A stretch of DNA of 64,000 nucleotides from Asterias rubens (taxonomy: Eukaryota): NCBI RefSeq assembly GCF_902459465.1, contig NC_047065.1, forward strand, positions 22,630,001 to 22,694,000. The letters are read 5' to 3'. A program made the translations under genes and the position numbers. Under the pieces are notes generated by a model. That model made no database searches. It was not told the DNA's origin and was given only the letters and a program-made list of their open reading frames with translations. Each line of letters opens with the position of its first letter. Position 1 is the first letter of the stretch. Of the stretch, positions 2,064-33,100 are shown in pieces.

Positions 2064-5000
2064 ATGGATGAGGGAAATATTGTCGTCCAAGATGGTGATG
2101 GTAGCGCGTCTGTCAATGGGGTGGAGAAACGTGTGCCGGAGGGAGATGGTGTCTCCTGCAGGAGTCACAAGGAGGAAGACGGGGACGAACCGGTGGCGCT
2201 CAAACGCCAGATCGGTCTGGTGGGTTGCATCGCCTTCGTAGTCGGTACCGTCATCGGCTCCGGGATCTTCATCTCCCCGAAGGGCGTGCTGCAGAACACC
2301 GGCAGCGTGGGGTTGTCTCTCGTCGTCTGGGTCGCCTGTGGGATACTCTCCACCATCGGGGCTCTCTGCTACGCCGAGTTGGGGACGTGCATTACAAAAT
2401 CCGGTGGTGATTTCACGTACATTTTGGAGAGTTTCGGCGCCGTGCCGGCTTTCCTGCGCGTTTGGACGCTCTTAGTGGCCGTGCGTACAGCATCGTTTGC
2501 CGTACTTGTTATTACAGCTGCAACGTATCTTATTCAACCATTTTTCGGTGACTGTGGAGTACCTACGTCTGTAATTCAATTACTTGGAGCTACACTACTC
2601 GGTAAATAACATAATCATCACTATAACAGCCATTGGACACTTTCGGTAATTATGCTACTTATATGATTTGAGTAATTACCAAACGTGTTCAGTATCTTGA
2701 AGAGCCAATAGCTCTCATTTGAAAATATTTATGACTGTGTCATTTACATTTTTATTAAATGCTTCTTTGCTTCATTAATTTGCATATTTGCGTTACAAAT
2801 GAACTCATATGTGGACATTGTAATATTTTAAGGTTTCTTAAAATAGAATACAATCAACACGACGTGAGAATTAAATGTCAATTTGAGTGGTTCAATAATT
2901 GACCTGTTGACCTTTATAAAGCACACTTAATTGGACCAAAAAGGGTCCTAACTGGGGTGCAAAGGAAGCAAATAATTGGACGATAATCGTTCCTTGGGCT
3001 TGAAACGTGTGCATGTTATGTCCCACCTTGTAGCGTTTCGCCTTATGCAAGGGGTTTATAATGACACATCACAACTAAATAACGACAGCGCACTATGTTA
3101 TGTGACCAAAGCATCTGACGGCCACAGCGCGTGCAGTAAACTGGGTTAGAGTTCATAATTCCATGTACGCCCTCTGAACAAGGCCTGCTCTGATTGTGAC
3201 GTGACTCCCCCTTTCAAAGGTTTCGATACATTGTGTAGGTCAAGTGCTTGGACATAACACGAATCCCTACACTGTAAATAAAGAGGTGTATATTTACCCT
3301 TAGAAGTTCAGCTTCAACAGTCGTCAAGTTTTTAGAAAAAAAAATGAAAACCATAACGCAACGTATGAGGCATTTGTACAGGCATTTGTCTCCGTTTAGA
3401 AGAAAACTTTGCTCGTGAAATTGTTTTACTAATTTTTCTAAAACAGCAACTCAGACACTTTCTACTATCATCATCTTAAAACCGTGTTAATGTTATGAAA
3501 ACCCGTGGAAGCTTGTGTGTTGTGAAGCTTCTCTTTAATTTAAGTCACTAGTTTGCTTTAATTTTAATCGACAACGCCCATCCAGTCGTGTCATGATGCC
3601 GTCAATTATGTATATGTGTTGTGACAGTACATCATTGAATTATCAATTAATGAAATAATAAAAAATCAAACATGCTGTGGTGCTATACAGAAACGTTTAG
3701 AACGAAAACCGGTTTTCGTTCTAAATGTTTATAGCACCACAGCATTTGAAAACAGAAATATTTCTTTGCAAAAAGAGCTTTTGACCAATTTAAAACAAAT
3801 AAACAATGCTAAATTGTACTTTGTAAAAATTAATATTATTCAATATTATTATATATAATTATAACATAATTTAAAGTATAGTTGCTAAATACGCCGCGCA
3901 AGAATTTCTAAGGTCGTGGATGGGTTCGAATCCCAACCGAATGATATGCCTGTGATATATATATTATATATATATTTTTTATTTTCATTTTTATTTTATT
4001 TTTTCGGGGGGGGGGGGGGGGGTCACAGTACCCGGTATATAGTGCTTACTCAGATCGGTTTATATGGGTAGAAAACAAAATTAATAATTATTCTTTATCC
4101 CGGATACAAGTTTGCATCTAAGTTAACTTTAATTTTTGGTTGGAGTGGTGTTCACGTATTATCTCTGTTAGCTAATCTTTTTTTCTGATTATCCCTCTCT
4201 GATTAGCTGCCGTGTTCTGCTTGAACAGTGTGAGTGTGGCATGGAGTAACCGAGTCCAGATTATCTTCAGTGTCGCTAAAATACTGGGTCTAGTCATCAT
4301 CATAGTGTCGGGCGTGGTTCTCATGATACAAGGTGATAAGTCCTTATTCAACATTTGTATTAGTTGATTAATAGATAAGAAAATACACCAAACAGTATTT
4401 ACCCTATATGGGTCGTTTTCCCCATTGGATGTTTTAAAGGCAGTGGACACTATTAGTAATTACTCAAAATAATTATTAGCATAACATCTTTCTTGGTGAT
4501 GAGTAATGGGGAGAGGTTGATGGTATAAAACATTGTGCGAAACGGCTCCCTCTGAAGTGCCATAGTTTTCGAGAAAGAAGTAGTTTTACACGAATTTGAT
4601 TTCGAGACCTCAGATTTAGAACTTGGGGTCTCGAAATCAACCATCTAAATGCACACATCTTCGTGTGACAAGGGTTATTTTTCTTTCACTCATATCTCGC
4701 AACTTGGACGACCAATTGAGCTCAAATTTTCACAGGTTTGTTATGTTATGCATATATTTAGATACACCAAGTGAGAAGACTGGTCTTTGACAATTACTAA
4801 TAGTGTCCACTGCCTTTAAGTGTAGAGTGGTTTTAAAAAAAAAACATCAAATACGGGTTCTGGTGGTAGAGTGTTGTCGTTTTGTCAGCCATACCACTCT
4901 CGCAAAAAGCCATATGGAGGAGAACTATTTTTTAGAGTGATAAACGGTACTTTCAAAATTTCACTCATAAAGAGTGAGACAGATTGACTTTCACTCTTAA

Positions 5001-8000
5001 TAGAGTGAAACTGACATCTGTCCACTCGGACAAGAGAGTGGAATTTTCATTCATTTACATTAAGAGAGTGGGTTCGAGTCACGGTCGTGACAGTTGTTTC
5101 CTTGCGCAAGATGCTTTACTATAATTGCAATTCTCTTCACCAAGGGGTATATTTGGGCACCTGCTGTTGTAAAGCTTGATATATATATATTGCATGGAAA
5201 GGCCTTTTGAGCGCTACATACTTGCTCGTGGTAACATGTTTACTCCCCTCCCCCATCATGAAGCTGAGAAAGTATAGAGGAATTTCATTGGCCCAATTGC
5301 ACACAAATTTGTATAGGAAAATTAAATCTAAAGGTGCGATTTTCTCCTGAAGTGCATATCTTGAGCACAGGGCACTATAAATGTAAAGTTCAATGGATTG
5401 GTTATTTTGAATTGCGCTGTATAAGAACTTTTATATTATTGGTGTTTAATACTTTGACACCAAACGTTGACGTCAAAAATACAGCGTAAAATTAACCCTT
5501 TGTAATAATAAAACGTCACCCTAATGACAGGTTTATCAAATTTACAGTTTTATTGGGTTCTGTTCATCGTTATCAATGCACACAAATCATAAAAGGATAT
5601 CCCATAAATTCAATAAATTAGACTCGATGCCAGTTGAGTCCTTACTATTATAAACACGGCAAACATTATTCGTGACTACCTTCACAGCCAAATCTGGTTT
5701 TAAGACCTCAAAGTCTGGCCAAATCCACCTATAAATAGTATGTGTCTGATATGCCAGCTGGTTGTGTCTGATGATGACACAGTTCATTGTTTTTTTGTTT
5801 TTTAATTTTAATAGTGCAATATTACGGTAATAACAAGAAAGATAAATACGACCTTTGCTTAGGTGTAACTGACTCAGTCGTATGCGCCAGTTTTATTTCC
5901 TCACGTAATCAAGCATTAACGAGATAAAAATGATCTAAAAACAAAGACTATAAAGATAACCGCCCTCTCTTGGCCATCGATGACGTCATACTCAACCTTG
6001 TAAAACATCAAATCGTACCGAATATTATCATACGTAGTTATAACGGGACATTTTTAAGTTTGAAAGCAGATTGTGTGTTAAATCGTACTGAAGCATAAAC
6101 ATGTATAGAGACGGGCAAGCGGCTTTAGACCATCAAATCTATAGTAATCGGTGTTGCTGGCCACAGCAGAATAGTAGAGTAATTAAAATATAGTTTACGT
6201 GTTGTAGGCACAACATTCCACTAGTTTACGTCAGGGGGTAGATCATACTCTATCGCTCGGAATTCCAGGGGGGGGGGGGCGGGTTGGTAATTCAACATTG
6301 ACCATTTTTCCTTGGCACATTCGTCCAATAGCAGACAGTGGACGTACATTTTATCAAAAGACTAAAAAGTTGTTACACTTTTGGTGATAATTCCAATATT
6401 TGCTCCATTACAAGTATCGTGCGCATTAAAAAGGAGATCATACTTGATTCGTGTGTGTCTGATTTCAAGATCACAACATTTTTTCCCACAGACGAATTGA
6501 GTTGTCCACAAATTGATTTCCGTGCAAATAGTATATTGATTTTAAATTCCTTTTTTCCCCCCTTTTTTTTAAGGAAATGTTGAGAATTTAAGAGATGGAT
6601 TTACTCCAGCCATCGAGGTATCCGCTTCAGATATCCCGTTGGCGTTCTACTCAGGTCTCTTCGCTTATTCTGGATGGTCAGTACAGGGCCAAATTTCATA
6701 GAGCTGCTAAGCACGAAAATTTGCTTAGCATGAAATTTCTTTCTTTATAAAAACAGGACTACCAACCAAATTTCCATATGTTGCATATTGCTTGTTACTG
6801 GTGTTCAGCTGTTGTTTGCTTATCCTGAAAATCCAACTGAAATTTTGTTGGTAATCCTATTTTTTATCGAGGCAAAAATTTCATGCTAACCAAATTTTTG
6901 GCTGAGCATCTCTATGAAATTGGGCCCAGATGGTTGTTGTTGTTGTTGCTGCTACGCTTTTGCTGCTGTTGTTGTTGTTGTTGTTGTTGTTAATGTTGTT
7001 GTTTTTGGCTCATGCTTTTGGTGTTAAATTTGCATCAGGGGTTAAGAATGGTTGCTGCATTGCTGCTTAAACGAGATGTGAAGGGAGGGGACAAAGATAT
7101 GTTGGGGGTTAGGTTAATGTATAAAACAACTCAATTTCGATTTACATTTTGGGGAATGGGGGGGGGGACGAGGGGATCCGAGTCGACCCTTTCCCCATCC
7201 ACCCCTGGGTACCAGGCAGCCTCGGTGGTAACAATAGCCTGCTCTATAGAATGGCAAAGGTCGTAGTTTCGAATCCCTAGCAAGGAAGAGCTCATGAAAT
7301 TACCAAAGATACTGGAGTTAACACACAAAGTATGGGTAAAAAAAAACCAAGAAAGTTGTTGGTGTTGTTGTCATGAGGTATTCCGGTTACAATTTTGAGA
7401 AATTTATTAAATTTGAAATTACCAATGGTAATTTGCAATATTGCTAATTTTCTCAACTCTTCGATGGTTACAGGCAATTCCTTCCAAGCTTCACAGAGGA
7501 AATTATTAATCCAGCAAGGTAAGAATATTTTAATAACTTTTTGTAACACAAAACACAATGTCCACAGATTTGCACCAAATATACACCGTTTGAAGATAAT
7601 GATAGTAGAAAGCGTATCTTAACATGTTAGTTGCTGAGGTGCTGTAGTTTTTGAGAAATTAGTAAAACAATGTCATAAAAATACGCTTTTATATGCTAAA
7701 ATAAGACGAAATTTATTTTGATGACTAAAGCACCTCAGCAATTAACATTTGCAAGGAAGCTTTCTATCATCGTTATCTTCAAACTGTGTAAGTTTAACGC
7801 CAAATCCTTGGACATTGTGTTTTTTGTCCTACAAAAAGTACATAGACCCTTTAACACCGATGATGATCCTGGGATTGCGTGCCTCTAAAAGTATTTTGCA
7901 ATTTCGTGAAGTACTAATGTTGGTACTTGTACTTGGTACTTGGACTCAAGTCCCTCTGGAGTACCGTTTTGATGGTACTAATATCTCGTACTCATGCAAG

Positions 8001-11000
8001 CAAACTATATTACTCACTCGACACTGGGCGGGAAAAGTAATCTTTTCAAAGAGATGCAAGCCCTGTATACTCTTTACCCTACTGTAAGTGTACTTCGTCT
8101 ACGATGTAATAATTTGTCGTCAACCAAACTGTTATTTGCGTTTTAAATTCTTTGAAGGAATATCCCAATTGGAATTGTCGTCTCTATGACCATTATCACG
8201 GGTGTCTACATCATGGCCAATTTAGCCTACTTTGTTGTCCTGACACCGGCTGAGCTCCTTGCGTCAGAAGCTGTCGCTTTGGTAAGTTGAAACGACGAGC
8301 TAGGCACTGGACACTATTGGTAATATACTCAATGCCCCTTATTTTTGACCGCGCGGGGGCGCTATAAATAGTATTTTGATCACTTCCGGGGGTACAGCGA
8401 CGCCCGCCAATAAAGGCCCTTTGACGCCGTAGTTCATTTGAGTGGATTAACTCCTTTAAGTCTATGTCTGGGTAACCATCAAAAACTTACCAGGCAATGA
8501 GCAATGGGGAGCTATTTATAGTATAAAACAGTGAGAAACGGCCTCCTCTAAAGTCACCTCGTTTATGAGAAAGAGGTAATTTCTCATTCAAGTTATAAAA
8601 GACTTCAGTTGAAGTCATTTAGTAAAATAAAATGCATCTGAAAGTGTTTTTTTCTCTGTCTTTGTTTTCTTGGCAATTCGATGACCAACCGAGCCCAATT
8701 AATGTTCACAGGTTTGTTGTTATACATACGTTGGAATACACCGAGTGAGAATACTGGTACCCACAAGCAATTGTGTTTCACTATATCAAAGTTGGTACCT
8801 TCGAACATCGGGTTTAGTCGAAGGCTGCCACAAGATTAAAGACACTGGACACTATTGGTAATTGTCAAAGACTACACTGTTATTCTCCTGTGTAAAATAA
8901 CGCTGTGTAACTTTTTGTTTAAACAACCTGTGTAATTTTTAAACAAGGTTGTGTGATCATATCCAAGCTGTGTAAATCCTATGTTGTGTAAATGTAGTTT
9001 TATGTTATAAACCGATATTTGCCGCCTAAAATGAACTTGAACAACTGTTGTGTAAACTTTTAAGCACGTGATATGAAAGTAGCCAATCACGACGTCACAA
9101 AAAAGCTGGAAAAATGGCAGACGTGCCGGAGTTGTTAGAGCAGTGGGGATTTGGGGATTTGGTTGAAGTTTTTGACGGTAAGTACAATGTTTCAATTGTT
9201 TTATTAATAAAAAGCACGAACATGAAGTATTGTAGCGTAAACTGTGTGTGATTTTATCACATGGCTTTTGGTAAATTAGCCCAAAATTTATTTCAAGAAG
9301 TTTGCTTACACGGCATCGACGGCACTGCATACAGTAGTGCACATGAAGTTCAACAGGAATATACGTTGATTCTGAACTGAAGGCTCGAAGTTGTTCGAAT
9401 CTTCGATCATATTTGTTCCGTGCAAGTTTATTATGTTTGAGCCAGAATTTACACCCAAAACAATTTTTTATTTGAAGGGTATTCCGTAATAAATGTGTTT
9501 GTGAAATGACTTAATATTAGTACAACCATTTGTGACCAATGATTTTCCGTTTCGGAAAAGTGCAAATTCCGTTTCCGTTTCCGACATAAAAATTCAGTTT
9601 CAACTTTACACGTTAAAAAACTCTCTATTAACCAACGGCCGATTCAGTTCCGGAGTTGGCAATTTTCAAAATTTTACGGATCCAATGTTATAGAGATAAG
9701 CAGTAAAAACAAGTTAGAAACATGCAACAGCCGTTGCGTTATCATTGCACCAAGACAGAAACAGAACGTCAGCCATTTTGTTTTCACTTTGGCGACAAAA
9801 TGTTGAAAGTTTATGGTTGATTTGTGACCTTTATGAGTGAACAATCAATGTGTGAGTTCATATAGAGCAGGGGTAAGCTGGTTTATGTATGGTTGTTGAT
9901 TAAAGGGAGGGATATAATGCAATTTGAGTGAAAAAAAACAGTAAAGAACGTGCCGTGAATGTGATGATTTTGACCTCCAACTCCGTAGTCATGGTATGGT
10001 AGTGTTACTATAAATACCATAGAGCAAGGCCTATGCTAATACATATACTAGCATTGTAAACAACGTGTATTCATTTGTACATCGTTCGTAGGCTGACATG
10101 ACCCTGGTTGAACTGACCGAGTCACAAGGTATGTGTTTGTTTGACCATTACTATTTTTTGACATTTTACACTTGTAAACAGATTTGCAGTTGGTTTTCAC
10201 TGTTTTAACAGATGCATTGTAAACCATATATTTAAACAAATATTGATGGCTTTATCTTGCAGTTCTGAAAAACATAGTTTCCCATGTGACATAGAAACAA
10301 TTGTTTATTTCTCACGGACTATTTCAAGTGAAAGTTTATGATTTATTTTCCAAATGGTCAGTTGTTTTTATGAAGAGTTGTTCTGCCTGCAGCTTTAAAC
10401 AAAATTCCAGTATAGTCAGTACACAATGCACTCCTATTGTAAACCTAGGCCATGAAATAAGTTGTAAGCAAAATGGTTGTTGAGCATAAAAGACAAGTTG
10501 TCATGTTAAGTTACACTCGATGAAATAAGCACTGAAATTCGACGGTTCACAATTTATTTTTATGGTCATTTTTTAGTTAAAGAAGCAATAACATGGATGA
10601 AACATAATGAAGAACCAAAGGCAATGTTATTTGAGTACATGGCCAACACCTGTAAACAACGTTACAACTGGATCAAGACAGATAGCCCAACTACAGCAGA
10701 GATCCTGGAGGTGTATCCTCGGCTGTTAGATCCAGGAATTGTAAGTTGCATGTTTTAATAACTAGCTTTTCTCTTTGTTGCAGTGGTATATGCGTGTTGA
10801 GTACAACATTTAGTAGAATTTAAGTTGCATTAATATGTTGGAATTAGACAGACAAAGATCTCTTTTTTACATATCAGCATCAACAGTGACCTATGGAGCA
10901 ATTATTCTGAATGTTTGTCCATAGCAACAACCTATTGAATCCGATGAAAGTGAAACTTTATTTAAAAGATAACAAATATATTTACTGCCAGAAGGTTAGC

Positions 11001-14000
11001 CAAGAGCATTCAATAGGGTGCAAAACTGTATGGATGTTTGCACAGCACAATTACTTTTATTGGTTGAACTTAGTTCAATTTTGTAAAAATCTAAATAATA
11101 ATTACTGACTATGGCTTTAACATAACAAATAGCCAAATTCAAATTGTGGAAGAAACCTCTAATCCAGTGAAAACTGCACAGGACATTGACACTTATTGCC
11201 TTGTATTATTATTAAGCATAATGTATTGCCTTTACTAACAAATTGCTAATAACTTCAATAAAGGGTAATTATGACAAAAACTTTGAGAGATGCGGTGCGT
11301 AAATAATTAAAAAAGCTGGGAGACTGCATCCTTCTGCAACTGAGTTTTCCAGTTGAGGTTTTTGTGGTGGCTGTAGCGTTTGACACAGTTGTAAAAGCTC
11401 ACCTGATAATTATGTTAAACCATTTATTTATAACTCATTTACTTACTTATTTTCCTTATTATGACAACTTTAGGTTGAGCAAGATTTCCGACTGGCGATC
11501 TCTGAAGAGACTAACCAGCTTTATGCTAAGTGGCCTTCTTTTTCCAAACAAGTGTACAAGTACAACTCGAAGGTACTCGGGATCAATTGGGAAAAGCAGT
11601 TGGATGTAGGAGAGATCGATTTTGGCAACTTGACAGAAGGTGAGGTATATTAAATACCCAACATAATAATTATTCTTAACTTTACCTTATTATATTCAGT
11701 GCAATGTGGAAAAAGAATACTCAACAATTGTAAATTCTGAAAAAGAGTTTTGAAACTGAGCTTTGTAGTAGCCGTTAATTGGATTGATTCCATTTCCATT
11801 ATCGGGTGTATATCTTATATTAATTTATATTGCTACTACTTTCTGACATTTCTTATGACAACTTGGCAACAATTTCTTTTTTTGCTGCTTTAATTAGTTG
11901 CTTTAGAAATTACACACATGAGTGCCCTGAATATGGCCATTTTACAAGTGAACTCAAGGGACTCTTGCATTATTATTTCCATCAACATGTCTGCTCTGCA
12001 AGTGTGTATTTTTAACTGTCCCATTTTTCTCTCTATCCTGCAGTCGATTGACATCATACTTAATTTGTTCATTTGAATTATTTTCATAATTTCAGAGGAG
12101 TGTCAAGAACTGGCTTTCTCAGTTTTGCCATTACTTTTTGTGGGGAGGAGCAAAGGCATGAAAGGGAGATGTACCCCTGCAGAATCCCTGCGATCGTTCA
12201 TCGATATGAAACCAGTAAGCTATTTTTTTAATTTTTGAGAATTTGTTCAATATGTCATTTTGATAAGTGGTTTTTTATTGTCAGACATTGTAAGACGAGG
12301 CTAATTCCTCATTTAGCTGGGGATTAACAAAAGTAAATTTTGTCCAAATCAAGACACTTTTCGTTTGTAGTGTTTGCGACCCTTTTTTAGAAAAGTAGAA
12401 ACCATGTTTTCAGGTCTTCCATTTTACTATTTATTGGGAAAGCACTTCAAGGGTTTCAGTTTCCACTACTCCTGAAAATGCTAACTGATCCCTTTATACT
12501 TACAAATCTTGGTGCTTTTGGGGTTAACAAGGATCCTTTAATTTGATGGATGACAAGATACAATGAAAAAGGAGTCCTCTGGGCAATAGGCCTAGGTGCC
12601 AAAATAAACCAAATACACTTATCTTTAGAGCACACTGGATCCTGCATAATTGTTGAAAACAGACATGGTTTGGGATCCACTAGACCCCTTACATGTTTTA
12701 AGTGCAATCTCAGCTATTCAATTTTGTGCCAAGTGGGCTGTTCTTCTATGTTTAAATTATACCATATATTTTTTAATAGGAAGGTACTGACATCCAAAAC
12801 TACATGGCGAGCATTCCGGCAAAGGAACGCCCACAGCCCTTCATTCTTCTTCTTGGTGGAAGCAGGTTCAGCCCTCAACAAGTCTTCATGGTAGTGGAGA
12901 GAAGGGCTGTTTTATGTTCATCAATTCTTCAAGCAGTAGACATATGCATGAAAATTATCTATGTACTCGATTTGGATTACCAGCCACACTGCAGTGCAGT
13001 GTGGCACATGCTACAACACATGGTGTATATGTTGCCACCAGGTTCCCTGGCAGGTGTCTCATTGATAACTTTCCGAACTTGGCTGAGACATTTGCCAGAG
13101 GCCTAGGTAGGAATCTATTTTCAGATAGGTTATACACACAGCATAAATAAAGAAAATTCCGAAACAAAAATATATGTAATGGCAAAGAAATTATAATAAT
13201 AATGAAGTACATGCATAGTTACAAACAAAAACTGTTTTCAAAGTTTAAAGGCACTGGACATGTTTGGTAATTATCACAGACCAGTATTGTCACTTGGTGT
13301 ATCCCAACAAATGCATAAAATAACAAACATGTGAAAGTTTGGGCTGAATTGGTCATCGATGTTGCAAGAAAATAATGAAAGAAAAAACACCCTTGTTCCC
13401 CAAATTTGGGTGCTTTCAGATGCCTGAAAAAGGCTTCAGGCCTGAAGTCTTTTTATATTTTAGTGAGAAATTACCTCTTTCTCAAAAACTAATTGGTAAT
13501 TACTCAAAATATATATTAGCATAAAAACCTTCTTTGGTAACGAGCAACAGAGAGCTGTTGATAGTATAAAACATTGTGAGAAACGACTCCCTCTGAAGTA
13601 ACGTAGTTTTTGAGAAAGAGGTAAATTCTCACTAAAATAATAAAAGACTTCTGGCCAGAAGCCTTTTATTCCTATCTGAAAGCACACTAATTTGTACAAC
13701 AAGAGTGTTTTTTCTTTCATCATTTTCTTGCAACTTCAATGACCAATTGAGCCCAAATTTTCACAGGCTTGTTATTTTATGCATATGTTGGGATACACCA
13801 AGTGAGAATACTGGTCTTTAACAATTACCAAACGCGTATTGTAAAAGCATGTGAGATAATTGAGTTCTAAATCAACAAATTTGTTTACTTTTTGATGGCA
13901 GATGTGGACATGGGAAACCAGTGGTCAATTCATGACATGACCTGTACAATTTGTAGTCTTATATATTGTATAGTATGTTAATTCATTGACATTACCTGTA

Positions 14001-17000
14001 CAATTTGAGTTGCTTTTAGATGATACATGTATATAGAACACAGAAAACATGAAAACTAATGGTCAATTCATGACTTGACCTGTACAATTTAGTATGTTAA
14101 CACGCAAAACGTGGAAAATAGTAAATTCATTGACACTATACCTGTACAATTTGGGTAAGTTTAAGATTTCAGATAGAACAAGGAAAACATGGAAAATGGT
14201 CAATTCATGACATGACCTGTACATAGCTACATGTATTTTTTGATGAGTGGGATAAGGACAAACGCGATGAGGTTGTGCATGGTCACTGTACATGTAGGTG
14301 TTTGGTGAAGCCAGTGGCATGCAACCACCATAGCCACTACAAATTAAACAGGGAAATGTCTGATTAAAACTGACCCATTGGTGTATGTATAAATTAATTC
14401 TTTGTTTCCTGAATGAAAAGACCAAAGGTTGTTCGTGCATACAGATAAAGGTGTGCTATTTATCTGATTGCAGTTGAAGACAAATTTAACAAAGTTATAG
14501 TTTAAACTTCCTGTCAGAAACTTGTGCATAGCTATGAACAAACGCCACACTATGAGCTGTGGTGGTTCTGGGATGAACTGGTGGTTTAACAAACTTGATG
14601 TTTCGATCAGTGTGCTCTGATTGTCTTCAAGAAAACGAAGAATTCCTCTGAAGAAAATCAAATCACACTGGTTTGAGGCATCAAGATTTAAACCACCTGG
14701 TCTTTTCGAAACTCATGTACATGGTGTTTACTGCAAACCTTACTAGATTGTTTTTCCACTGTGCAATTATTGATTGGGATTTAATGTTTGTTTTTGTTGT
14801 GTTTTTTTTTTGGGGGGGCGGGGGGTAGTGTTTCAGCTTTTGTTTTGTAATTTGAAATGTTTGCCCAATGGCCGCACATACCAGTGCGCATTACTTTTGA
14901 AATTCTTATTTTTTTCACATTATAGAAACAAAAAGGTAAAAACAAAATGTTTCAAATTGCACAAAACGCCCATCACTAACTCCCCCCCCCCCCAAGAAGA
15001 AAAAATGGAAAACAAATTTAGACTGTCAATTATTGTTGTTATAGTTGTTAATTGTATGCCTTCATAAAAATGAATTGTGATGTGAAATGTTATTTGGTGT
15101 AGGCCTAGTTGTGGCTAATAAAACTCACCCCAAAATTTAATTTAAAACCAAGGTTTCTGAATTGTATATTTTTTATGTGTCTTAAAATGGCCATTCCACA
15201 ACTTAAAAGTAATACACAACTATTGTGTAAAACATTAAGCAATAGCTGTGTAAACGATTTACACAACTAATTGTGTAAATTAATCTTACACATTATTGTG
15301 TAGAAATACTACACAACTGTTGTTTACAAATTACACAACTTCGGTTGTGTAAACTGTTTACACAACAGTTGCTAGGTTCATATAGTAAACAGGGGTTGTG
15401 TAAAATTTTACACAACTTGTTGAAGATTTTACACAACCGAAATAACAGTGTAGTCTTCACAGTTGGTGTATCTCAACATATGCATAAAATAACAAACCTG
15501 TGAACATTTGAGCCCAATCGGTCGTCGAATTTGCGAGATAATAATGAAAGAAGAAAAAACCCTTGTGTCACGAAGCTGTGTGCTTTCTTATGCTTGACTT
15601 CGAATCCTCAAAATAATTCTAAACTTGAGGTCTCGAAATCAAATTCGTGGAAAATTACTTCTCTCACGAAAACTACGTCACTTCATAGGGAGCTGTTTCT
15701 CACAATGTTTTATACCATCAACCTCTCCACATTACTAGTAATCAAGTAAGGTTTTATGATGATAACAACTGTCTTTTATTATGCAGACCTTTGCTGAACG
15801 TGTTCTTGGACCTTGGTCTGTGATCATCTCGATAGCTGTCGCCATGTCCTGCATCGGATCGTTAAACGGTGCTCTGTTCTCATTCGCAAGGTACGTATCC
15901 TAATGTCAAACAACTGAGAATTATTTAGTAAATTGTTTTAGCACTTGTTTTCTGCGCTTGCTATTTTTGAGATAAATAAGTTTCCCAGTTTGTTTCCACG
16001 GAAACAGAACAAAAAAGTTCACAGATTTACAAATAACTTACATGTTTTACAGAAGGTTATGGTGAAAGACTTCTCTTGAAATATTGTTCCATGAAATGCT
16101 TTACATTTTTAAGAAAACATTAAAACAAATTTTAAAATGTTCGATATCGAGAATTACAGATTTATTATAAACACATGTCATGACACGGCGAAACGTGCGG
16201 AAACAAGAGTGGGTTTTCCCGTTATTTTCTCCCGACTCCGATGACAGATGAGCCTTAAGTTTCACTGGTTTGTTATTTTTAATATAAGTTATGATACACG
16301 AAGTGTGGGCCTTTGGATAACACTGTTTACCGAAAGTATCCAATGGCTTTAGAGTAAAAACGCTGAGAATTATTTTGTATGGAATTTTCAGCAGTAACAC
16401 CATTCAAAAACTATGCATGTGGTTGTACTTCAGGAGGTGTCTTTGTTCCTGTGCTTAGTAATGTTTTAGCTAACATAAGTTTATCAATTTATTGTTTCAT
16501 AAGCAAACCTTAAGCAAACACAACAGTGTCGCCCCAACGAATGTTTTGCGATTTTGTTAGTATTATTTCATTAAAAAAAGGTAATTTTACCAAAATCAAT
16601 TTTCAATTCTCAATGTGTCAATTTAGTTGAATTTTCCGAATAATCAGCAATCAATCACACAATCACACCTCATCTTTTCACTTTTTTTTCAGAATATTGA
16701 TGGTGTCGTCAAGAGAGGGGGTAATGCCACAAGTTCTTGGCATGATACACATAGATTACAAGTCACCACTTCCAGCGGCAGTTGTTTCGGTAAAAAGAAG
16801 TCCATTACACAAGATTATAAACACATTGTTAAAGGCTTTTCAAATTCATCCGTATTCATAAGGTAAACTGTAGCCGCAGTCGTAGACTTAACCGTGGATG
16901 TAGCCAGTGTCAGATGAAATCAGACATAGATGCATATTAATTGTTAATTTTGTTCTCATGAGCCCCGATATCAAAACACTCACCAACTACCAGAGTTCCA

Positions 17001-29830: not shown

Positions 29831-30150
29831 TAACCTTTAGAATCTATAGACGCGGCTTTACAACTATGGTTCAATGAGTTTTTACTAAAATGACAATCCG
29901 TGTTTTTAATATTTAAATAAAAATAACAGTCCAAGGTGTGCTTTTTGTTATTTGTATACCGGTTACAAATTGACTTAATCTAAGACAACTACTGCATGAC
30001 TCACCTTTGTACTCAAAATGTCAGTAATGGGATGTTTCGGAAAATAAATAGTTCCATTCAGACTTGAGGTTTTGACGGCTTTGAGTGTCTGTCAAAACTC
30101 CATGGGGGATTGTTGTTTCTTTCGACGGGTGGATATCTGTACGAGTCATC

Positions 30151-33100
30151 ATGGATGGCCTGCACATGGCAATACACGAGACTGAAATATCCAGAGCCCA
30201 TATCAAGAGATGGAACCACGATCCAATACCAGTCCGGATATCGCCGGAGCACGTCGCCAAATTCCACCGGGCCGAAGTGACTCTTGAACGGCAGATCGGG
30301 CTCGGTGGATGCATCGCTTTCGTTGTCGGCACCGTGGTGGGCTCGGGAATTTTCATCTCACCGAAAGGAGTGCTGAAAAACACCGGCAGCGTGGGGATGG
30401 CGCTCATGGTGTGGGTCACCTGTGGGATTTTATCGGCCATCGGGGCGCTCTGTTACGCTGAGCTCGGAACGACCATCCCGAAGTCCGGTGGAGACTTCAC
30501 GTATATTCTAGAGACGTTCGGAGCCATTCCGGCATTCCTGCGAGTGTGGACGAACCTGGTGGCCGTTATCACCGCACAGTATGCCGTCATTTCAGTCACC
30601 GGGGTCACCTACATGTTGAAGCCTATTTTTGGAGACTGCGAGATACCGTACTTTTTGATTCAGTTTCTGGCTGTATTATTGCTAGGTAATGTATATATAT
30701 TCCACGACTGAAAAGTGGCGACTCAGTCACAAAAAAGTGTGTTCATACTTTGGAGTCAATGAATATGGGTAAAAATTATTATCCAATAGCTCCTTGTTAT
30801 AACTATGGAAAAAGGACCTTTTCGCAATAAGGTGCATGCTGGTCTAGCTAGGCCGATCAAGTTTGATCGCCAATATATTAGACCAGCTATACTGACCAGA
30901 TAGCTACACCGGCTAGGCCGATCACGTTTGATCGCCAGCCTAGCTAGAAAGCATGCACTTCATTCAACAGTTGGGCAATAGGTATTTGCGAAAGGGTCTA
31001 TAATACAGTAGTAAGCATCCTGCAAAGTTATTTCGCCTAAAATGTCATAGTGATTAGAAATGTAACTCTCTTAAGATCGGCTTTTGGGTTTAAAATTTCA
31101 GTGGTGTCCGTTTGTGAATGCTACGGCCATAGATGCGGTTGGCACTCGCTGTCATCGTGCTTAACCTGGGCCCAAATTCATAAAACCCTTTAAAGGCACT
31201 GGGCACTATTGGTTATTACAAAACTAAATTGTTACCATAACAACTTATCCTTGCATCGAGCAATGGAGAGCTGTTGTTTGTCTAAACATTGTATGAAGTA
31301 ATATCGTTTTGGTGTTTGAGAAAGAGGTAGTTTCTCACTCAAATATTGAAATACTTCAGCTGAATCTTGTTTATTTCTTTCATTATTCTCTTCCAAAGTG
31401 AGCCCAATATTTTGCACAGGTTTGTTATTTTTATGCATATGCTGAGATAAACCAAGCGAGAATGCTGGTCTTTGACAATTACCAAAGGTGTCCATACAGT
31501 GCCTTTAAATTCATTCTAAAAAAAATTTGGTCGCTTTGAGACGCCCTTCGGATTTGCAAAGCGCGCTGTTTACAAACTGATTGTTATTATTATTAGTGCT
31601 ATTAATATTTTCATTATCATCAATGTTAATACTGTTTGTTTCCCAGTGGCTATATTCTGGTTGAACAGTGTGAGTGTTCTATGGAGTAAGCGAGTTCAGA
31701 TTATCTCTACAGTAGCTAAAGTCGTTGAGCTGCTTCTCATCATCGCCTCGGGATTGTATTTCATGTGGCTAGGTATACACATGAATGTCTCTAAATTATT
31801 CTTAGGGGAAGATAAAAGTAGGGGTGAACAAATCATTGCATGAATGTTCATTGTCTGAATATTCATTGGACATTCATCGAATACGCATTTGCTTATAATC
31901 GATGTCCAAATGTTCTGTGCCACTCAATCAAAGAATATTCAGTGCGTGAACATTTTGCTGAATATCCATTGCATGCAAAGCAAAACAACTAATTTTAAAA
32001 TGAATGTCTCAAAGATTTTCTCAAAAACTGACTTTGATGTCACCTTAAGGGGAGATATAAAATGTGGTGAATAAATCATTGTATGAATGTTTATTGTCTG
32101 AAGAATAATTGAATGTTTAAATCAAAGTATATTCATCGATTGAACCTTTTCCTAAGCTAGGGTTAATCTGAAGACGTTAGAACGCATTGAACCAATCTTA
32201 GGACAAGTATAAACACTCATCCTTAAAGGAACACGTTGCCTTGGATCGGTCGAGTTGGTCTTTGAAAAGCGTTTGTTATAAAATGCACATGGGTAGAAAG
32301 ATGTTGTAAAAGTAGAATACAATGATCCACACAAACATGCCTCGAAATTGCACGGTTTTCCTTTTATCTCGTCGACTAACACCGTGTTAGTTCGCACAGT
32401 AAAAGGAAAACCACGCAATTTCGAGGCAAGTTTGTGTGGATCATTGTATTCTACTTTTAAAACATCGTTCCAATCATATGCAATTTAAAGAAAACTGTTA
32501 CAAAACGCTTTTTATAGACCAACTCGTCTGATCCAAGGCAACGCGTTCCTTTAACTAGAAATAGGATTAATCCTAGCGTTTCGTCAAATCGGCTGCTGGT
32601 CTTTTTAGGGGGACTTAACTGTTTATTATTCGTTTTTCTATCCAATGCAGGTCAAACTGGTAACCTAAAGCAAGCATTCAAGCCAGCTGTGTACGTGGAT
32701 CTTAGCAAGCTACCACTAGCTATGTACTCTGGTCTCTTCGCTTATTCTGGATGGTAAAGATCTCACTATGTAATCTTGTTGGCTAGAACTGATTATGTTT
32801 TGGGTAATTGTGAGACTGACCCGTAGTGAATCAGGCTGACCGGGGTATGTCAATCTGACTCAGAATGCGGGTTGGGAACAATGGATATGTCTGACCAGGT
32901 TTAGGGTAAAGGTGACGACAGACCTGTAGCAAGGTCAGGCTCACCGGGGTGTCTCAACGTGACTCAGTATGCGGGTTTCATTTGAACAGTAGGTCTGACC
33001 AAGGTAAAGGACAAGGTGAGAAAGACCCGTGACAGAGTCAGACTGATCGGTGGTGTCTGAACGTGACTCAGAATGTAGGTAACATACATTTAAAGGATGG

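What the first reader, a model, noticed from the sequence alone, without database searches (positions are those of the whole stretch)
8875..15450. Russian-doll insertion: a CACTG transposon with an intact spliced gene but no transposase, inside a MITE, inside a transporter intron
Seen: the element splits a K1 MITE exactly at aaagac-TA-gtcttc and duplicates TA. It has CACTGTTATT TIRs and tgtgtaaa subterminal arrays, and itself contains another K1-type MITE pair (13249-13840). It encodes a five-exon, stop-free ORF of about 279 aa with a promoter-like CCAAT/CRE and a polyA signal. I found no DDE/TnpD-type ORF. Known: CMC/EnSpm elements have CACT(A/G) ends, subterminal repeats and a second, TnpA-like gene. 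From memory, SAMD3-like proteins occur in animal members; I could not verify that here. Inference: a non-autonomous element that kept only its accessory gene in working order, possibly acting in trans as a regulator of its family.
Basis: partly seen in the sequence, partly recalled or inferred. Interest (0 to 1): 0.72.

Follow-up and report, generated by a model that had tools for sequence, protein, structure and literature searches.

The report
Deletion copy of an EnSpm-like transposon
This is a young, non-autonomous deletion copy of an En/Spm-like (CMC) cut-and-paste transposon of the starfish Asterias rubens; its "intact gene" is the back half of the element's accessory gene, and an intact 12.8-kb parent with the transposase sits elsewhere in the genome, so it is a clean but ordinary transposon case.

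Summary
Window 8875-15450 has perfect 10-bp CACTG TIRs, TA duplications and dense subterminal TGTGTA repeats. It also holds an inner MITE and a 279-aa five-exon frame. It splits a MITE inside an intron of an SLC7-type amino-acid transporter.

The genome (Asterias rubens) has seven copies about 99.9% identical. Five are short like this one. Two (C2, C15) are 12.8 kb, with 6.26 kb more at window position 10103. That extra DNA encodes a SAM-C2H2-DDE transposase with the CMC signature, and also the first half of the accessory gene.

In the RefSeq models of the parent, one transcription unit gives two products that share a 97-aa SAM-bearing N-terminus. One is the transposase (open frame about 921 aa). 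The other is a 528-aa accessory protein, as in maize En/Spm tnpD/tnpA.

The short copy lost everything from intron 1 to accessory residue 262. Its 251-279-aa products are therefore truncated chimeras and equal one compact C-terminal module of unknown fold. RNA contigs confirm three of the four predicted junctions. They did not list 9177/10577; the exon-2 acceptor joins donors at 10128 and 9872 instead. A regulator role remains untested, and the products are already in RefSeq as uncharacterised proteins.

The parts
8477..8872 (.). Host repeat (MITE family 'K1'). 8477-8758 matches the loop and right arm of the inner MITE; 8832-8872 is the first 41 nt of the arm that the element split.
8873..8874 (.). 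Left TA target-site duplication.
8875..8884 (+). 5' terminal inverted repeat, CACTGTTATT.
8885..9060 (+). 5' subterminal array: six direct YTGTGTAA motifs.
9065..9097 (+). Promoter-like motifs (CACGTG, CCAAT, GACGTCA) just upstream of the ATG. Their function is untested.
   Evidence: sequence only
9114..9177 (+). Exon 1: ATG plus 21 codons and one base. It is the first helix of the SAM domain, shared by the transposase and the accessory protein in the parent. RNA contigs break exactly at 9177.
9178..10103 (+). Remnant of parental intron 1. It holds alternative 5' exons with donors after 9851 (RefSeq isoform X3, ATG 9833) and after 9872 (RNA contig in run X1).
10101..10103 (+). Deletion joint with ACC microhomology. 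6,264-6,265 bp of the parent are missing between 10103 and 10104. An in-frame ATG lies at 10098-10100 and starts RefSeq isoform X2 (268 aa).
10104..10128 (+). Last 25 nt of the bisected accessory exon (parent residues 263-270). The donor after 10128 is joined to 10577 in RNA contigs.
10577..10740 (+).
11474..11639 (+). Junction 10740/11474 is seen in runs X1 and X2.
12096..12214 (+). Junction 11639/12096 is seen in runs X1 and X2.
12780..13106 (+). Last coding exon, with stop TAG at 13104-13106. Junction 12214/12780 is seen in X1 and X2, plus a loose end in X4.
13146..13151 (+). AATAAA. RNA contigs continue to 13272, so it is not an obligatory transcript end.
13241..13840 (.). Inner MITE of the same family as the host repeat, with 230-nt arms. 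It is present in all seven copies, so it inserted before the family amplified.
15200..15440 (+). 3' subterminal array: 14 TGTGTA motifs, 7 on each strand, several as inverted pairs 2-4 nt apart.
15441..15450 (-). 3' terminal inverted repeat.
15451..15452 (.). Right TA target-site duplication.
15453..15786 (.). Rest of the split host MITE arm and loop.
8156..8287 (+). Upstream exon of the host SLC7-type amino-acid transporter (AA_permease_2 profile 217-255).
15766..15900 (+). Next host transporter exon (AA_permease_2 profile 259-299).

Best explanation
Window 8875-15450 is one of five copies of a 6.6-kb internal-deletion derivative of a 12.8-kb CMC (CACTA/EnSpm-Mirage-Chapaev) DNA transposon of Asterias rubens.

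The parent has one transcription unit. This rests on RefSeq models that map with GT-AG at every intron; the RNA joints specific to the long copy were not checked.
- Exon 1 plus the start of a long second exon encode a SAM domain and an acidic linker (97 aa).
- Reading on through that exon gives the SAM-C2H2-DDE transposase.
- Splicing from a donor inside it (after ..DADE) to eight downstream exons gives a 528-aa accessory protein. This is analogous to maize tnpD/tnpA.

One deletion with 3-nt microhomology, presumably from abortive gap repair, removed everything from intron 1 to accessory residue 262. It left both TIRs and both subterminal arrays.

Shown: the short form then inserted at five or more separate TA sites.

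Inferred: it was moved in trans by the transposase of the intact parent.

The remaining exons are still transcribed and spliced from makeshift 5' ends. They can encode 251-279-aa proteins that equal the compact C-terminal module of the accessory protein, without the SAM domain or the N-terminal helical domain. I take these products to be by-products of the deletion, about 60%. A selected regulator role is possible but untested.
For: Copies:
- Seven copies with unrelated flanks exist, six of them with TA TSDs.
- They differ at about 20 sites in 6.6 kb, and all five short copies share one breakpoint.
- The long copies carry an extra 6,264/6,265 bp at window position 10103, with an ACC overlap.

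Transposase:
- The extra DNA holds a transposase ORF: open frame 921 aa in C15, frameshifted in C2.
- It has homologs across echinoderms, Lingula, fishes and insects.
- D389, D483, C503xxC506, H709xxxH713 and E733 are invariant or nearly so in 31 homologs. This is the CMC signature described in PMC12730594.
- 7 of the 31 homologs hit PF02992.

Accessory protein:
- P0275 (528 aa) maps exactly on the C15 copy, with GT-AG at every intron. Its first 97 aa are the transposase N-terminus.
- Sea-urchin homologs P0122 and P0124 align across the deletion joint, so the long form is ancestral.

RNA contigs from two studies:
- They join 10740/11474, 11639/12096 and 12214/12780.
- They join 10128/10577 (both runs) and 9872/10577 (X1 only).
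- In run X2, whose downstream introns have zero depth, a contig runs 9709-10128 across the short-copy joint.

Folding: the 268-aa product folds with pLDDT 93 and pTM 0.91.

Paired layout: besides the two long copies of this family, about 17-18 diverged paralog loci have the accessory domain about 5-7 kb (one about 10 kb) downstream of a transposase ORF on the same strand.
Against: - The splices specific to the long copy (exon 1 to element 1977, and 2204 to 5316) rest on RefSeq models and canonical sites. I could not lay reads on them.
- All laid runs are contigs, so depth, starts and the copy of origin are uncertain.
- At 9415, the window copy's only private base (G), both RNA runs read T. Transcription of this particular copy is therefore not shown.
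- The transposase itself gives no Pfam hit.
- Transposition in trans is inferred, not observed.
- The seven copies are too alike for any dN/dS test.
Confidence: 0.85

Rival explanations
1. The short element kept a working accessory gene, and its product acts in trans as a regulator of the family, for example as a competitor or poison subunit like the KP repressor of P elements or maize TnpA.
For: - The retained part is a complete, confidently folded module, and the deletion ends at a disordered linker (residues 237-262).
- Exons 2-5 are spliced and expressed.
- Short copies outnumber long ones 5 to 2.
- Exon 1 and the bisected exon are both phase 1, so the 279-aa frame is open.
Against: - Half of the protein is missing, including the SAM domain and the N-terminal helical domain.
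- The 9177/10577 joint was not among the listed RNA joints. The joints that were seen give heterogeneous 5' ends, some with upstream stops.
- Exon reads cannot be told apart from those of the two long copies.
- The copies are too young to show selection.
- A 5:2 excess of deletion derivatives is usual for DNA transposons.
Confidence: 0.15
2. The ORF is an ordinary host gene, or a fragment of one, captured by the element in the way Pack-type elements capture genes.
For: No Pfam family and no known fold for exons 2-5. RefSeq names the products only 'uncharacterized protein'.
Against: - It shares its first 97 residues and its promoter region with the transposase in the parent.
- The same domain lies downstream of diverged transposase paralogs at about 17-18 further loci.
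- It is fused to the transposase in Holothuria models P0041 and P0099.
- Its relatives are multi-copy in sea urchins and fishes.
Confidence: 0.03
3. The short form is ancestral, and the 12.8-kb form arose by insertion of a 6.26-kb segment with a 3-bp ACC duplication.
For: ACC stands on both sides of the extra segment.
Against: - The extra segment completes the SAM domain begun in exon 1.
- It also completes the exon cut at the right joint. Homologs from other echinoderms read straight across that joint.
- The segment has no TIRs of its own.
Confidence: 0.02

Closest known systems
Maize En/Spm (CACTA) and its dSpm/I deletion derivatives
   Same: - CA..TG termini with a CACT core, and short TIRs.
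- Arrays of a short subterminal motif in both orientations.
- One transcription unit whose large transposase ORF lies in what is an intron of the accessory transcript (tnpD/tnpA; PMC2613891).
- Internal-deletion derivatives that are moved in trans.
   Different: - The TSD is 2 bp (TA), not 3 bp.
- The two products share a coding N-terminus with a SAM domain.
- The accessory protein gave no Pfam hit beyond weak SAM matches, so no plant TnpA-type family was found.
- The host is an animal.
- DNA binding of the accessory protein to the TGTGTA motif is not shown.
SmTRC1 of Schistosoma mansoni and other animal CACTA-superfamily elements (DeMarco et al. 2006, PMC1636069)
   Same: - An animal element with a Transposase_21-type transposase and a 2-bp TSD.
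- Several alternatively spliced transcripts, including short ones that lack the transposase domain.
- That paper already noted transposase relatives in sea urchin and zebrafish.
   Different: - SmTRC1 ends in CCC, not CACTG.
- Its short products had no detectable relatives in other animals. The accessory protein here is conserved from echinoderms to fishes, Lingula and a springtail.
- The N-terminal SAM domain is not described for SmTRC1 in the passages I read.
Mirage/Chapaev branches of CMC, and ESTA (EnSpm-like elements with TA TSDs, fungi; PMC12730594)
   Same: [quoted passage not shown]
   Different: I did not place the transposase in a tree with Repbase EnSpm, Mirage, Chapaev or ESTA sequences, so the branch is open. 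ESTA is fungal and carries TET/JBP genes.
Chordate SAMD3-like proteins
   Same: A SAM domain followed by a body of about 430 aa. The Atlas model of P0275 aligns to a 'SAMD3-like' cluster with TM 0.66/0.59 over 360 residues and a feature score of 0.86.
   Different: - This is only a lead.
- No sequence or profile comparison with a SAMD3 protein was possible here.
- None of the 20 named clusters I looked up carries that name.
- The window's own product lacks the SAM domain.

Membership tests
CMC (CACTA/EnSpm-Mirage-Chapaev) DNA transposons | Termini 5'-CA..TG-3' with short TIRs. | tested here: met
   CACTGTTATT / AATAACAGTG, 10 of 10 complementary.
CMC (CACTA/EnSpm-Mirage-Chapaev) DNA transposons | Target-site duplication of 2-5 bp. 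| tested here: met
   TA on both sides in 6 of 7 copies at unrelated sites. Ungapped empty-site alignment.
CMC (CACTA/EnSpm-Mirage-Chapaev) DNA transposons | [quoted passage not shown] | tested here: met
   This holds in the autonomous siblings, not in this copy. D389, D483, C503xxC506, H709xxxH713 and E733 are invariant or nearly so in 31 homologs. The criterion comes from PMC12730594.
CMC (CACTA/EnSpm-Mirage-Chapaev) DNA transposons | Match to Pfam Transposase_21 (PF02992) at its curated threshold. | tested here: inconclusive
   The element's own transposase has no hit at E<=1. 7 of 31 homologs hit at E<=0.01, best 4.9e-7. Where scores were shown (P0026 21.8 bits, P0041 19.2 bits) they lie below the 28.6-bit cut-off.
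CMC (CACTA/EnSpm-Mirage-Chapaev) DNA transposons | Placement in a transposase tree (EnSpm, Mirage or Chapaev branch). | not tested
En/Spm-type two-product system (tnpD/tnpA) | One transcription unit, alternatively spliced into a transposase and an accessory protein. | tested here: inconclusive
   RefSeq models P0275 and P0276 map with GT-AG at every intron and share 97 aa with the transposase ORF. RNA contigs confirm only the downstream junctions.
En/Spm-type two-product system (tnpD/tnpA) | The accessory protein binds the subterminal repeats. | not testable with these tools
   The repeats are present. There are no binding data, and no DNA-binding fold was recognised.
En/Spm-type two-product system (tnpD/tnpA) | Sequence homology of the accessory protein to plant TnpA. 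| tested here: not met
   The Pfam scan of P0275 at E<=1 gives only weak SAM_1/SAM_2 matches. No TnpA-type family was hit.
Non-autonomous deletion derivative | Same termini as an autonomous element, internal loss of the transposase, several independent insertions. | tested here: met
   The copies are 99.9% identical outside one 6.26-kb gap, five copies share one breakpoint, and the flanks differ.
SAMD3-like proteins | N-terminal SAM domain. | tested here: not met
   The window's products keep at most 21 residues of it. The full-length parent protein does have it: Pfam E 0.002 and fold Z 10.5.
SAMD3-like proteins | A body homologous to that of SAMD3. | tested here: inconclusive
   Atlas structure TM 0.66/0.59 and feature score 0.86 to a SAMD3-like cluster. 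There was no sequence-level test, and the second Atlas call added nothing.

The most novel reading that the evidence does not exclude
The 251-279-aa C-terminal module made by the five deletion copies is not a by-product. It would be a selected trans-acting modulator of the family, a KP-repressor-like poison or competitor of the full SAM-bearing accessory protein, which would help explain why the deleted form outnumbers its parent. In addition, the accessory family (SAM plus a body of unknown fold, conserved from echinoderms to fishes) may be the stock from which chordate SAMD3-like genes were domesticated.
Probability: 0.15. Interest if true: 0.6.

Novelty: new member of a known kind. Interest (0 to 1): 0.4.

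Why it matters
- It documents an apparently still-active cut-and-paste transposon in an echinoderm. One autonomous copy is intact, one is freshly broken, and five deletion copies are near-identical and all inserted at TA sites. That is raw material for a homologous transgenesis or mutagenesis tool in starfish.
- It gives a clean animal parallel to the maize tnpD/tnpA arrangement, with a twist: the two products share a SAM domain. SAM domains often polymerise, which suggests that the two proteins co-assemble.
- The accessory protein is a widespread family with no Pfam family beyond the SAM domain and no recognised fold. Genome annotations list it as many 'uncharacterized' host genes, so flagging it as transposon-borne would clean up annotation.
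- For this particular window the result is mostly corrective. The gene is truncated, not intact, and its models are already in RefSeq.

Tried and rejected
- **Pfam on the five exons.** Each was scanned by reference: nothing, apart from one chance-level PriCT_2 hit.
- **My own first idea.** I took 10091-10128 (..DMTLVELTESQ) for a decayed second SAM exon. The long copies show that it is the deletion joint plus the tail of an accessory exon.
- **Word-index protein searches.** Searches with P0122 and with alignment A1 found only 4-6 close relatives and no informative name.
- **Fold searches of the full accessory model.** They matched only the SAM domain.
- **Fold searches of the high-confidence 268-aa model.** Foldseek gave nothing at E<=0.001. 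The best VIA hit was Z 5.4 on the first 75 helical residues. Faint restriction-endonuclease rows were dismissed, because the conserved D..K sits in a helix rather than in a PD-(D/E)xK strand.
- **SAMD3 link.** No named SAMD3 protein turned up in 20 clusters or in the papers.
- **dN/dS among copies.** This was abandoned: only about 20 differences exist, two of them in the retained exons, namely one E-to-D change in C11 and a 1-nt deletion in C2.
- **Joined spliced model.** The joined products used here are database proteins that the tools returned (P0270-P0277).


Full report
**What is in the window**

- A perfect 10-bp inverted repeat, CACTGTTATT, closes both ends.
- TA stands outside each end.
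- With the element and one TA removed, the flanks align without a gap through AAAGAC-TA-GTCTTC to both arms of the repeat at 13241-13840. The element therefore split a MITE of the same family that it carries inside.
- The TGTGTA core occurs 6 times in the first 239 nt, all direct. It occurs 14 times in the last 251 nt, 7 on each strand and several as close inverted pairs. Only 4 occurrences lie in the 6,086 nt between.
- The exons at 8156-8287 and 15766-15900 match consecutive stretches of the AA_permease_2 profile, and 2061-2609 is a clear SLC7-type first exon. The whole nest therefore lies in an intron of an amino-acid transporter, in the same orientation as that gene.
- The five exons read open in the stated phases.
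- No ORF of this copy resembles a transposase.

**Copies in the genome**

The genome is 417.6 Mb, and names and contig lengths returned by the protein tools identify it as Asterias rubens.
- Both ends and the last exon occur seven times at 100% identity.
- All seven copies have different flanks. Six have TA|element|TA and one (C11) has GT|..|TG. These are transpositions, not segmental duplications.
- Aligned in full, the copies differ at about 20 positions in 6.6 kb. The family is therefore very young, and dN/dS has no power.
- Five copies, including the window's, are 6,575-6,580 bp long.
- The copies on C2 and C15 are 12,842 and 12,846 bp. They carry 6,264/6,265 extra bases at window position 10103, with ACC on both sides of the joint.
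- All five short copies share that breakpoint, so the deletion happened once and the deleted form then spread.

**The parent element**

The extra DNA holds a long ORF. It is intact in C15 (open frame 921 aa) and broken by a 1-nt deletion in C2. The C2 copy also has a 1-nt deletion in accessory exon 3.
- Pfam does not recognise the ORF.
- It has more than 120 relatives in echinoderms, Lingula, fishes and insects.
- 7 of 31 aligned relatives reach PF02992 Transposase_21 at E<=0.01, and others reach DUF4218 and Plavaka.
- Two aspartates, a CxxC, an HxxxH and a glutamate are invariant or nearly so in that alignment. This is the arrangement given for CMC/CMCT transposases in PMC12730594, together with CA..TG termini and 2-5-bp TSDs.
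- I therefore place the element in the CMC superfamily. The branch (EnSpm, Mirage, Chapaev or ESTA-like) was not tested.

**Two products from one unit**

RefSeq proteins returned by the searches give the gene structure.
- P0275 (528 aa, from the C15 copy) maps exactly on the element with GT-AG at every intron.
Its second exon starts at element 1977 and ends at a donor (GTAATA) after residue 97.
- The transposase is the same exon 1 and the same second exon read on through that donor to the stop at element 4679.
- Transposase and accessory protein thus share 97 residues: a SAM domain (weak Pfam match; fold Z 10.5 to solved SAM domains) and an acidic linker.
- The transposase ORF lies in what is an intron of the accessory transcript. 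This is the layout of maize tnpD/tnpA (PMC2613891).
- Short transposase-less splice forms have been reported before for the animal CACTA element SmTRC1, which also makes 2-bp duplications (PMC1636069).
- I could not lay reads on the junctions specific to the long copy, so this step rests on the RefSeq models and canonical splice sites.

**What the window's copy lost**

The deletion runs from intron 1 (element 1230) to the middle of the exon that encodes residues 202-270 (element 7494).
- It removed the second half of the SAM domain, the zinc fingers, the whole catalytic region and accessory residues 22-262.
- Sea-urchin homologs P0122 and P0124 align straight across the right joint. The long form is therefore ancestral.
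Its product is identical to RefSeq isoform X1 (P0270, 279 aa).
- RefSeq lists three more isoforms for the same loci:
  - 268 aa, from an ATG at 10098 right at the joint;
  - 264 aa, from an ATG at 9833 with a donor after 9851;
  - 251 aa, from an ATG at 10597.
- The gene is thus a truncated chimera, not an intact accessory gene.

**RNA evidence**

Only assembled contigs were available, from four runs laid on 8875-14874.
- Two runs of the same organism label, from two studies, join 10740/11474, 11639/12096 and 12214/12780. A seawater metatranscriptome shows the exon-4 tail as a loose end at 12780.
- The exon-2 acceptor at 10577 is joined to the donor after 10128 in both runs. Only 26 nt lie upstream of that joint, exactly the part that long and short copies share.
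- In one run the same acceptor is joined to a donor after 9872.
- Contigs break exactly at 9177, as expected if that donor is used.
- In run X2 the downstream introns have zero depth, which argues against DNA carry-over. There a contig runs 9709-10128 across the short-copy joint, so short copies appear to be transcribed.
- At 9415, the window copy's only private base, both runs read the T of the other six copies. Transcription of this particular copy is therefore not shown.

**The accessory protein**

- HMMER over 1.8 billion representatives found 363 relatives of the last exon.
- Full-length relatives occur in all echinoderm classes sampled and in zebrafish and other teleosts, Lingula and a springtail. 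All are named 'uncharacterized', and several are multi-copy within a genome.
- In this genome, besides the two long copies of this family, about 17-18 diverged transposase paralog loci have this domain about 5-7 kb (one about 10 kb) downstream on the same strand. Two Holothuria models fuse the two parts. It is therefore the element's own gene, not a captured host gene.
- The full protein models as SAM, a disordered linker, a helical domain (123-236), a second linker (237-262) and a C-terminal module.
- The 268-aa short-copy product is exactly that module. It folds with pLDDT 93 and pTM 0.91.
- Neither Foldseek nor VIA-align finds a solved relative for it; the best VIA hit is Z 5.4 on 75 helical residues.
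- The ESM Atlas gives a chordate 'SAMD3-like' cluster as a structural neighbour of the full protein, with TM 0.66/0.59 over 360 residues and a feature score of 0.86. I could not run a sequence-level test.

**Verdict**

- The element is a non-autonomous deletion derivative of a young, probably still active CMC transposon, and its autonomous parent is present in the same genome.
- 'Intact spliced gene' is wrong. 'Accessory, TnpA-like gene' is right by position and by splicing logic.
- A regulator role for the truncated product remains speculation.
- The kind of system is known from plants and, in outline, from Schistosoma, and the proteins are already in RefSeq.
- What may be new is the shared SAM N-terminus and the breadth of the accessory family.
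Exons were searched singly by reference, and joined products were taken only from proteins that the tools returned.

Noticed in passing
G000:C15:5109166-5122011 (loci L022 and L024, minus strand): The only fully intact autonomous copy is 12,846 bp with TA TSDs. Its transposase frame is open for 921 aa and all accessory exons are open. A Logan contig (L025, run ERR12120957) is 100% identical to it over 4,041 nt. An ENA protein (P0280) differs from its transposase by four residues, so variant copies exist in other samples.
   Followed up: partly
G000:C2:6656085-6668926 (loci L021 and L023): The second long copy is freshly broken twice: a 1-nt deletion in an A-run of the zinc-finger region of the transposase, and a 1-nt deletion in accessory exon 3 (window equivalent 11485). 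RefSeq models it as 321/369-aa proteins (P0271, P0279).
   Followed up: yes
genome-wide, e.g. C4:16847289-16868419, C3:13105789-13126519, C15:12895401-12903285: There are 59 or more matches to related transposases (26-53% identity), many with open frames of 750-940 aa. At about 17-18 of these loci the accessory C-terminal domain follows on the same strand. This is a diverse and partly intact CMC clade in the starfish genome.
   Followed up: partly
genome-wide, e.g. C1:1851396-1851560 and more than 60 others: A 55-aa fragment that is 36% identical to residues 45-100 of the last exon recurs more than 60 times with the same score. It is probably a high-copy non-autonomous element that carries a piece of a related accessory gene.
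   Followed up: no
window 13275-13874: The inner MITE has a summed word depth of 10^5 to 7x10^5 in the two starfish RNA runs, against about 100-200 for the exons, and many non-canonical joints. The MITE family is extremely abundant in transcripts.
   Followed up: no
window 13915-14227: Four copies of a 38-nt unit (..GGTCAATTCATGACATGACCTGTACAATTT) lie 54-137 nt apart in the element's 3' non-coding part. Their purpose is unknown.
   Followed up: no
window 14802-14826 and 14979-15003: A T/G-rich run and a C/A-rich run form a 25-nt inverted pair, 84% complementary, 152 nt apart, and the run lengths vary between copies. A contig at depth about 676 in run X1 covers 13821-14784, just upstream of the first run, while run X2 has almost nothing at 13875-14474.
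   Followed up: no
window 30085-30708 and onward: A second SLC7-type transporter paralog starts about 9 kb after the first one ends. This is a tandem pair.
   Followed up: no
run X8: A run labelled as a different organism (organism B, 2024) holds 98% of the sampled words of 9000-13300. The near-identical element therefore also occurs under a second species label: a sister species, mislabelling or horizontal transfer.
   Followed up: no
P0118 and Atlas rows: Arthropod relatives of both the transposase and the accessory protein carry PF15992 (DUF4769), sometimes with SAM. That Pfam 'domain of unknown function' may be the arthropod version of this transposon-borne accessory protein.
   Followed up: no
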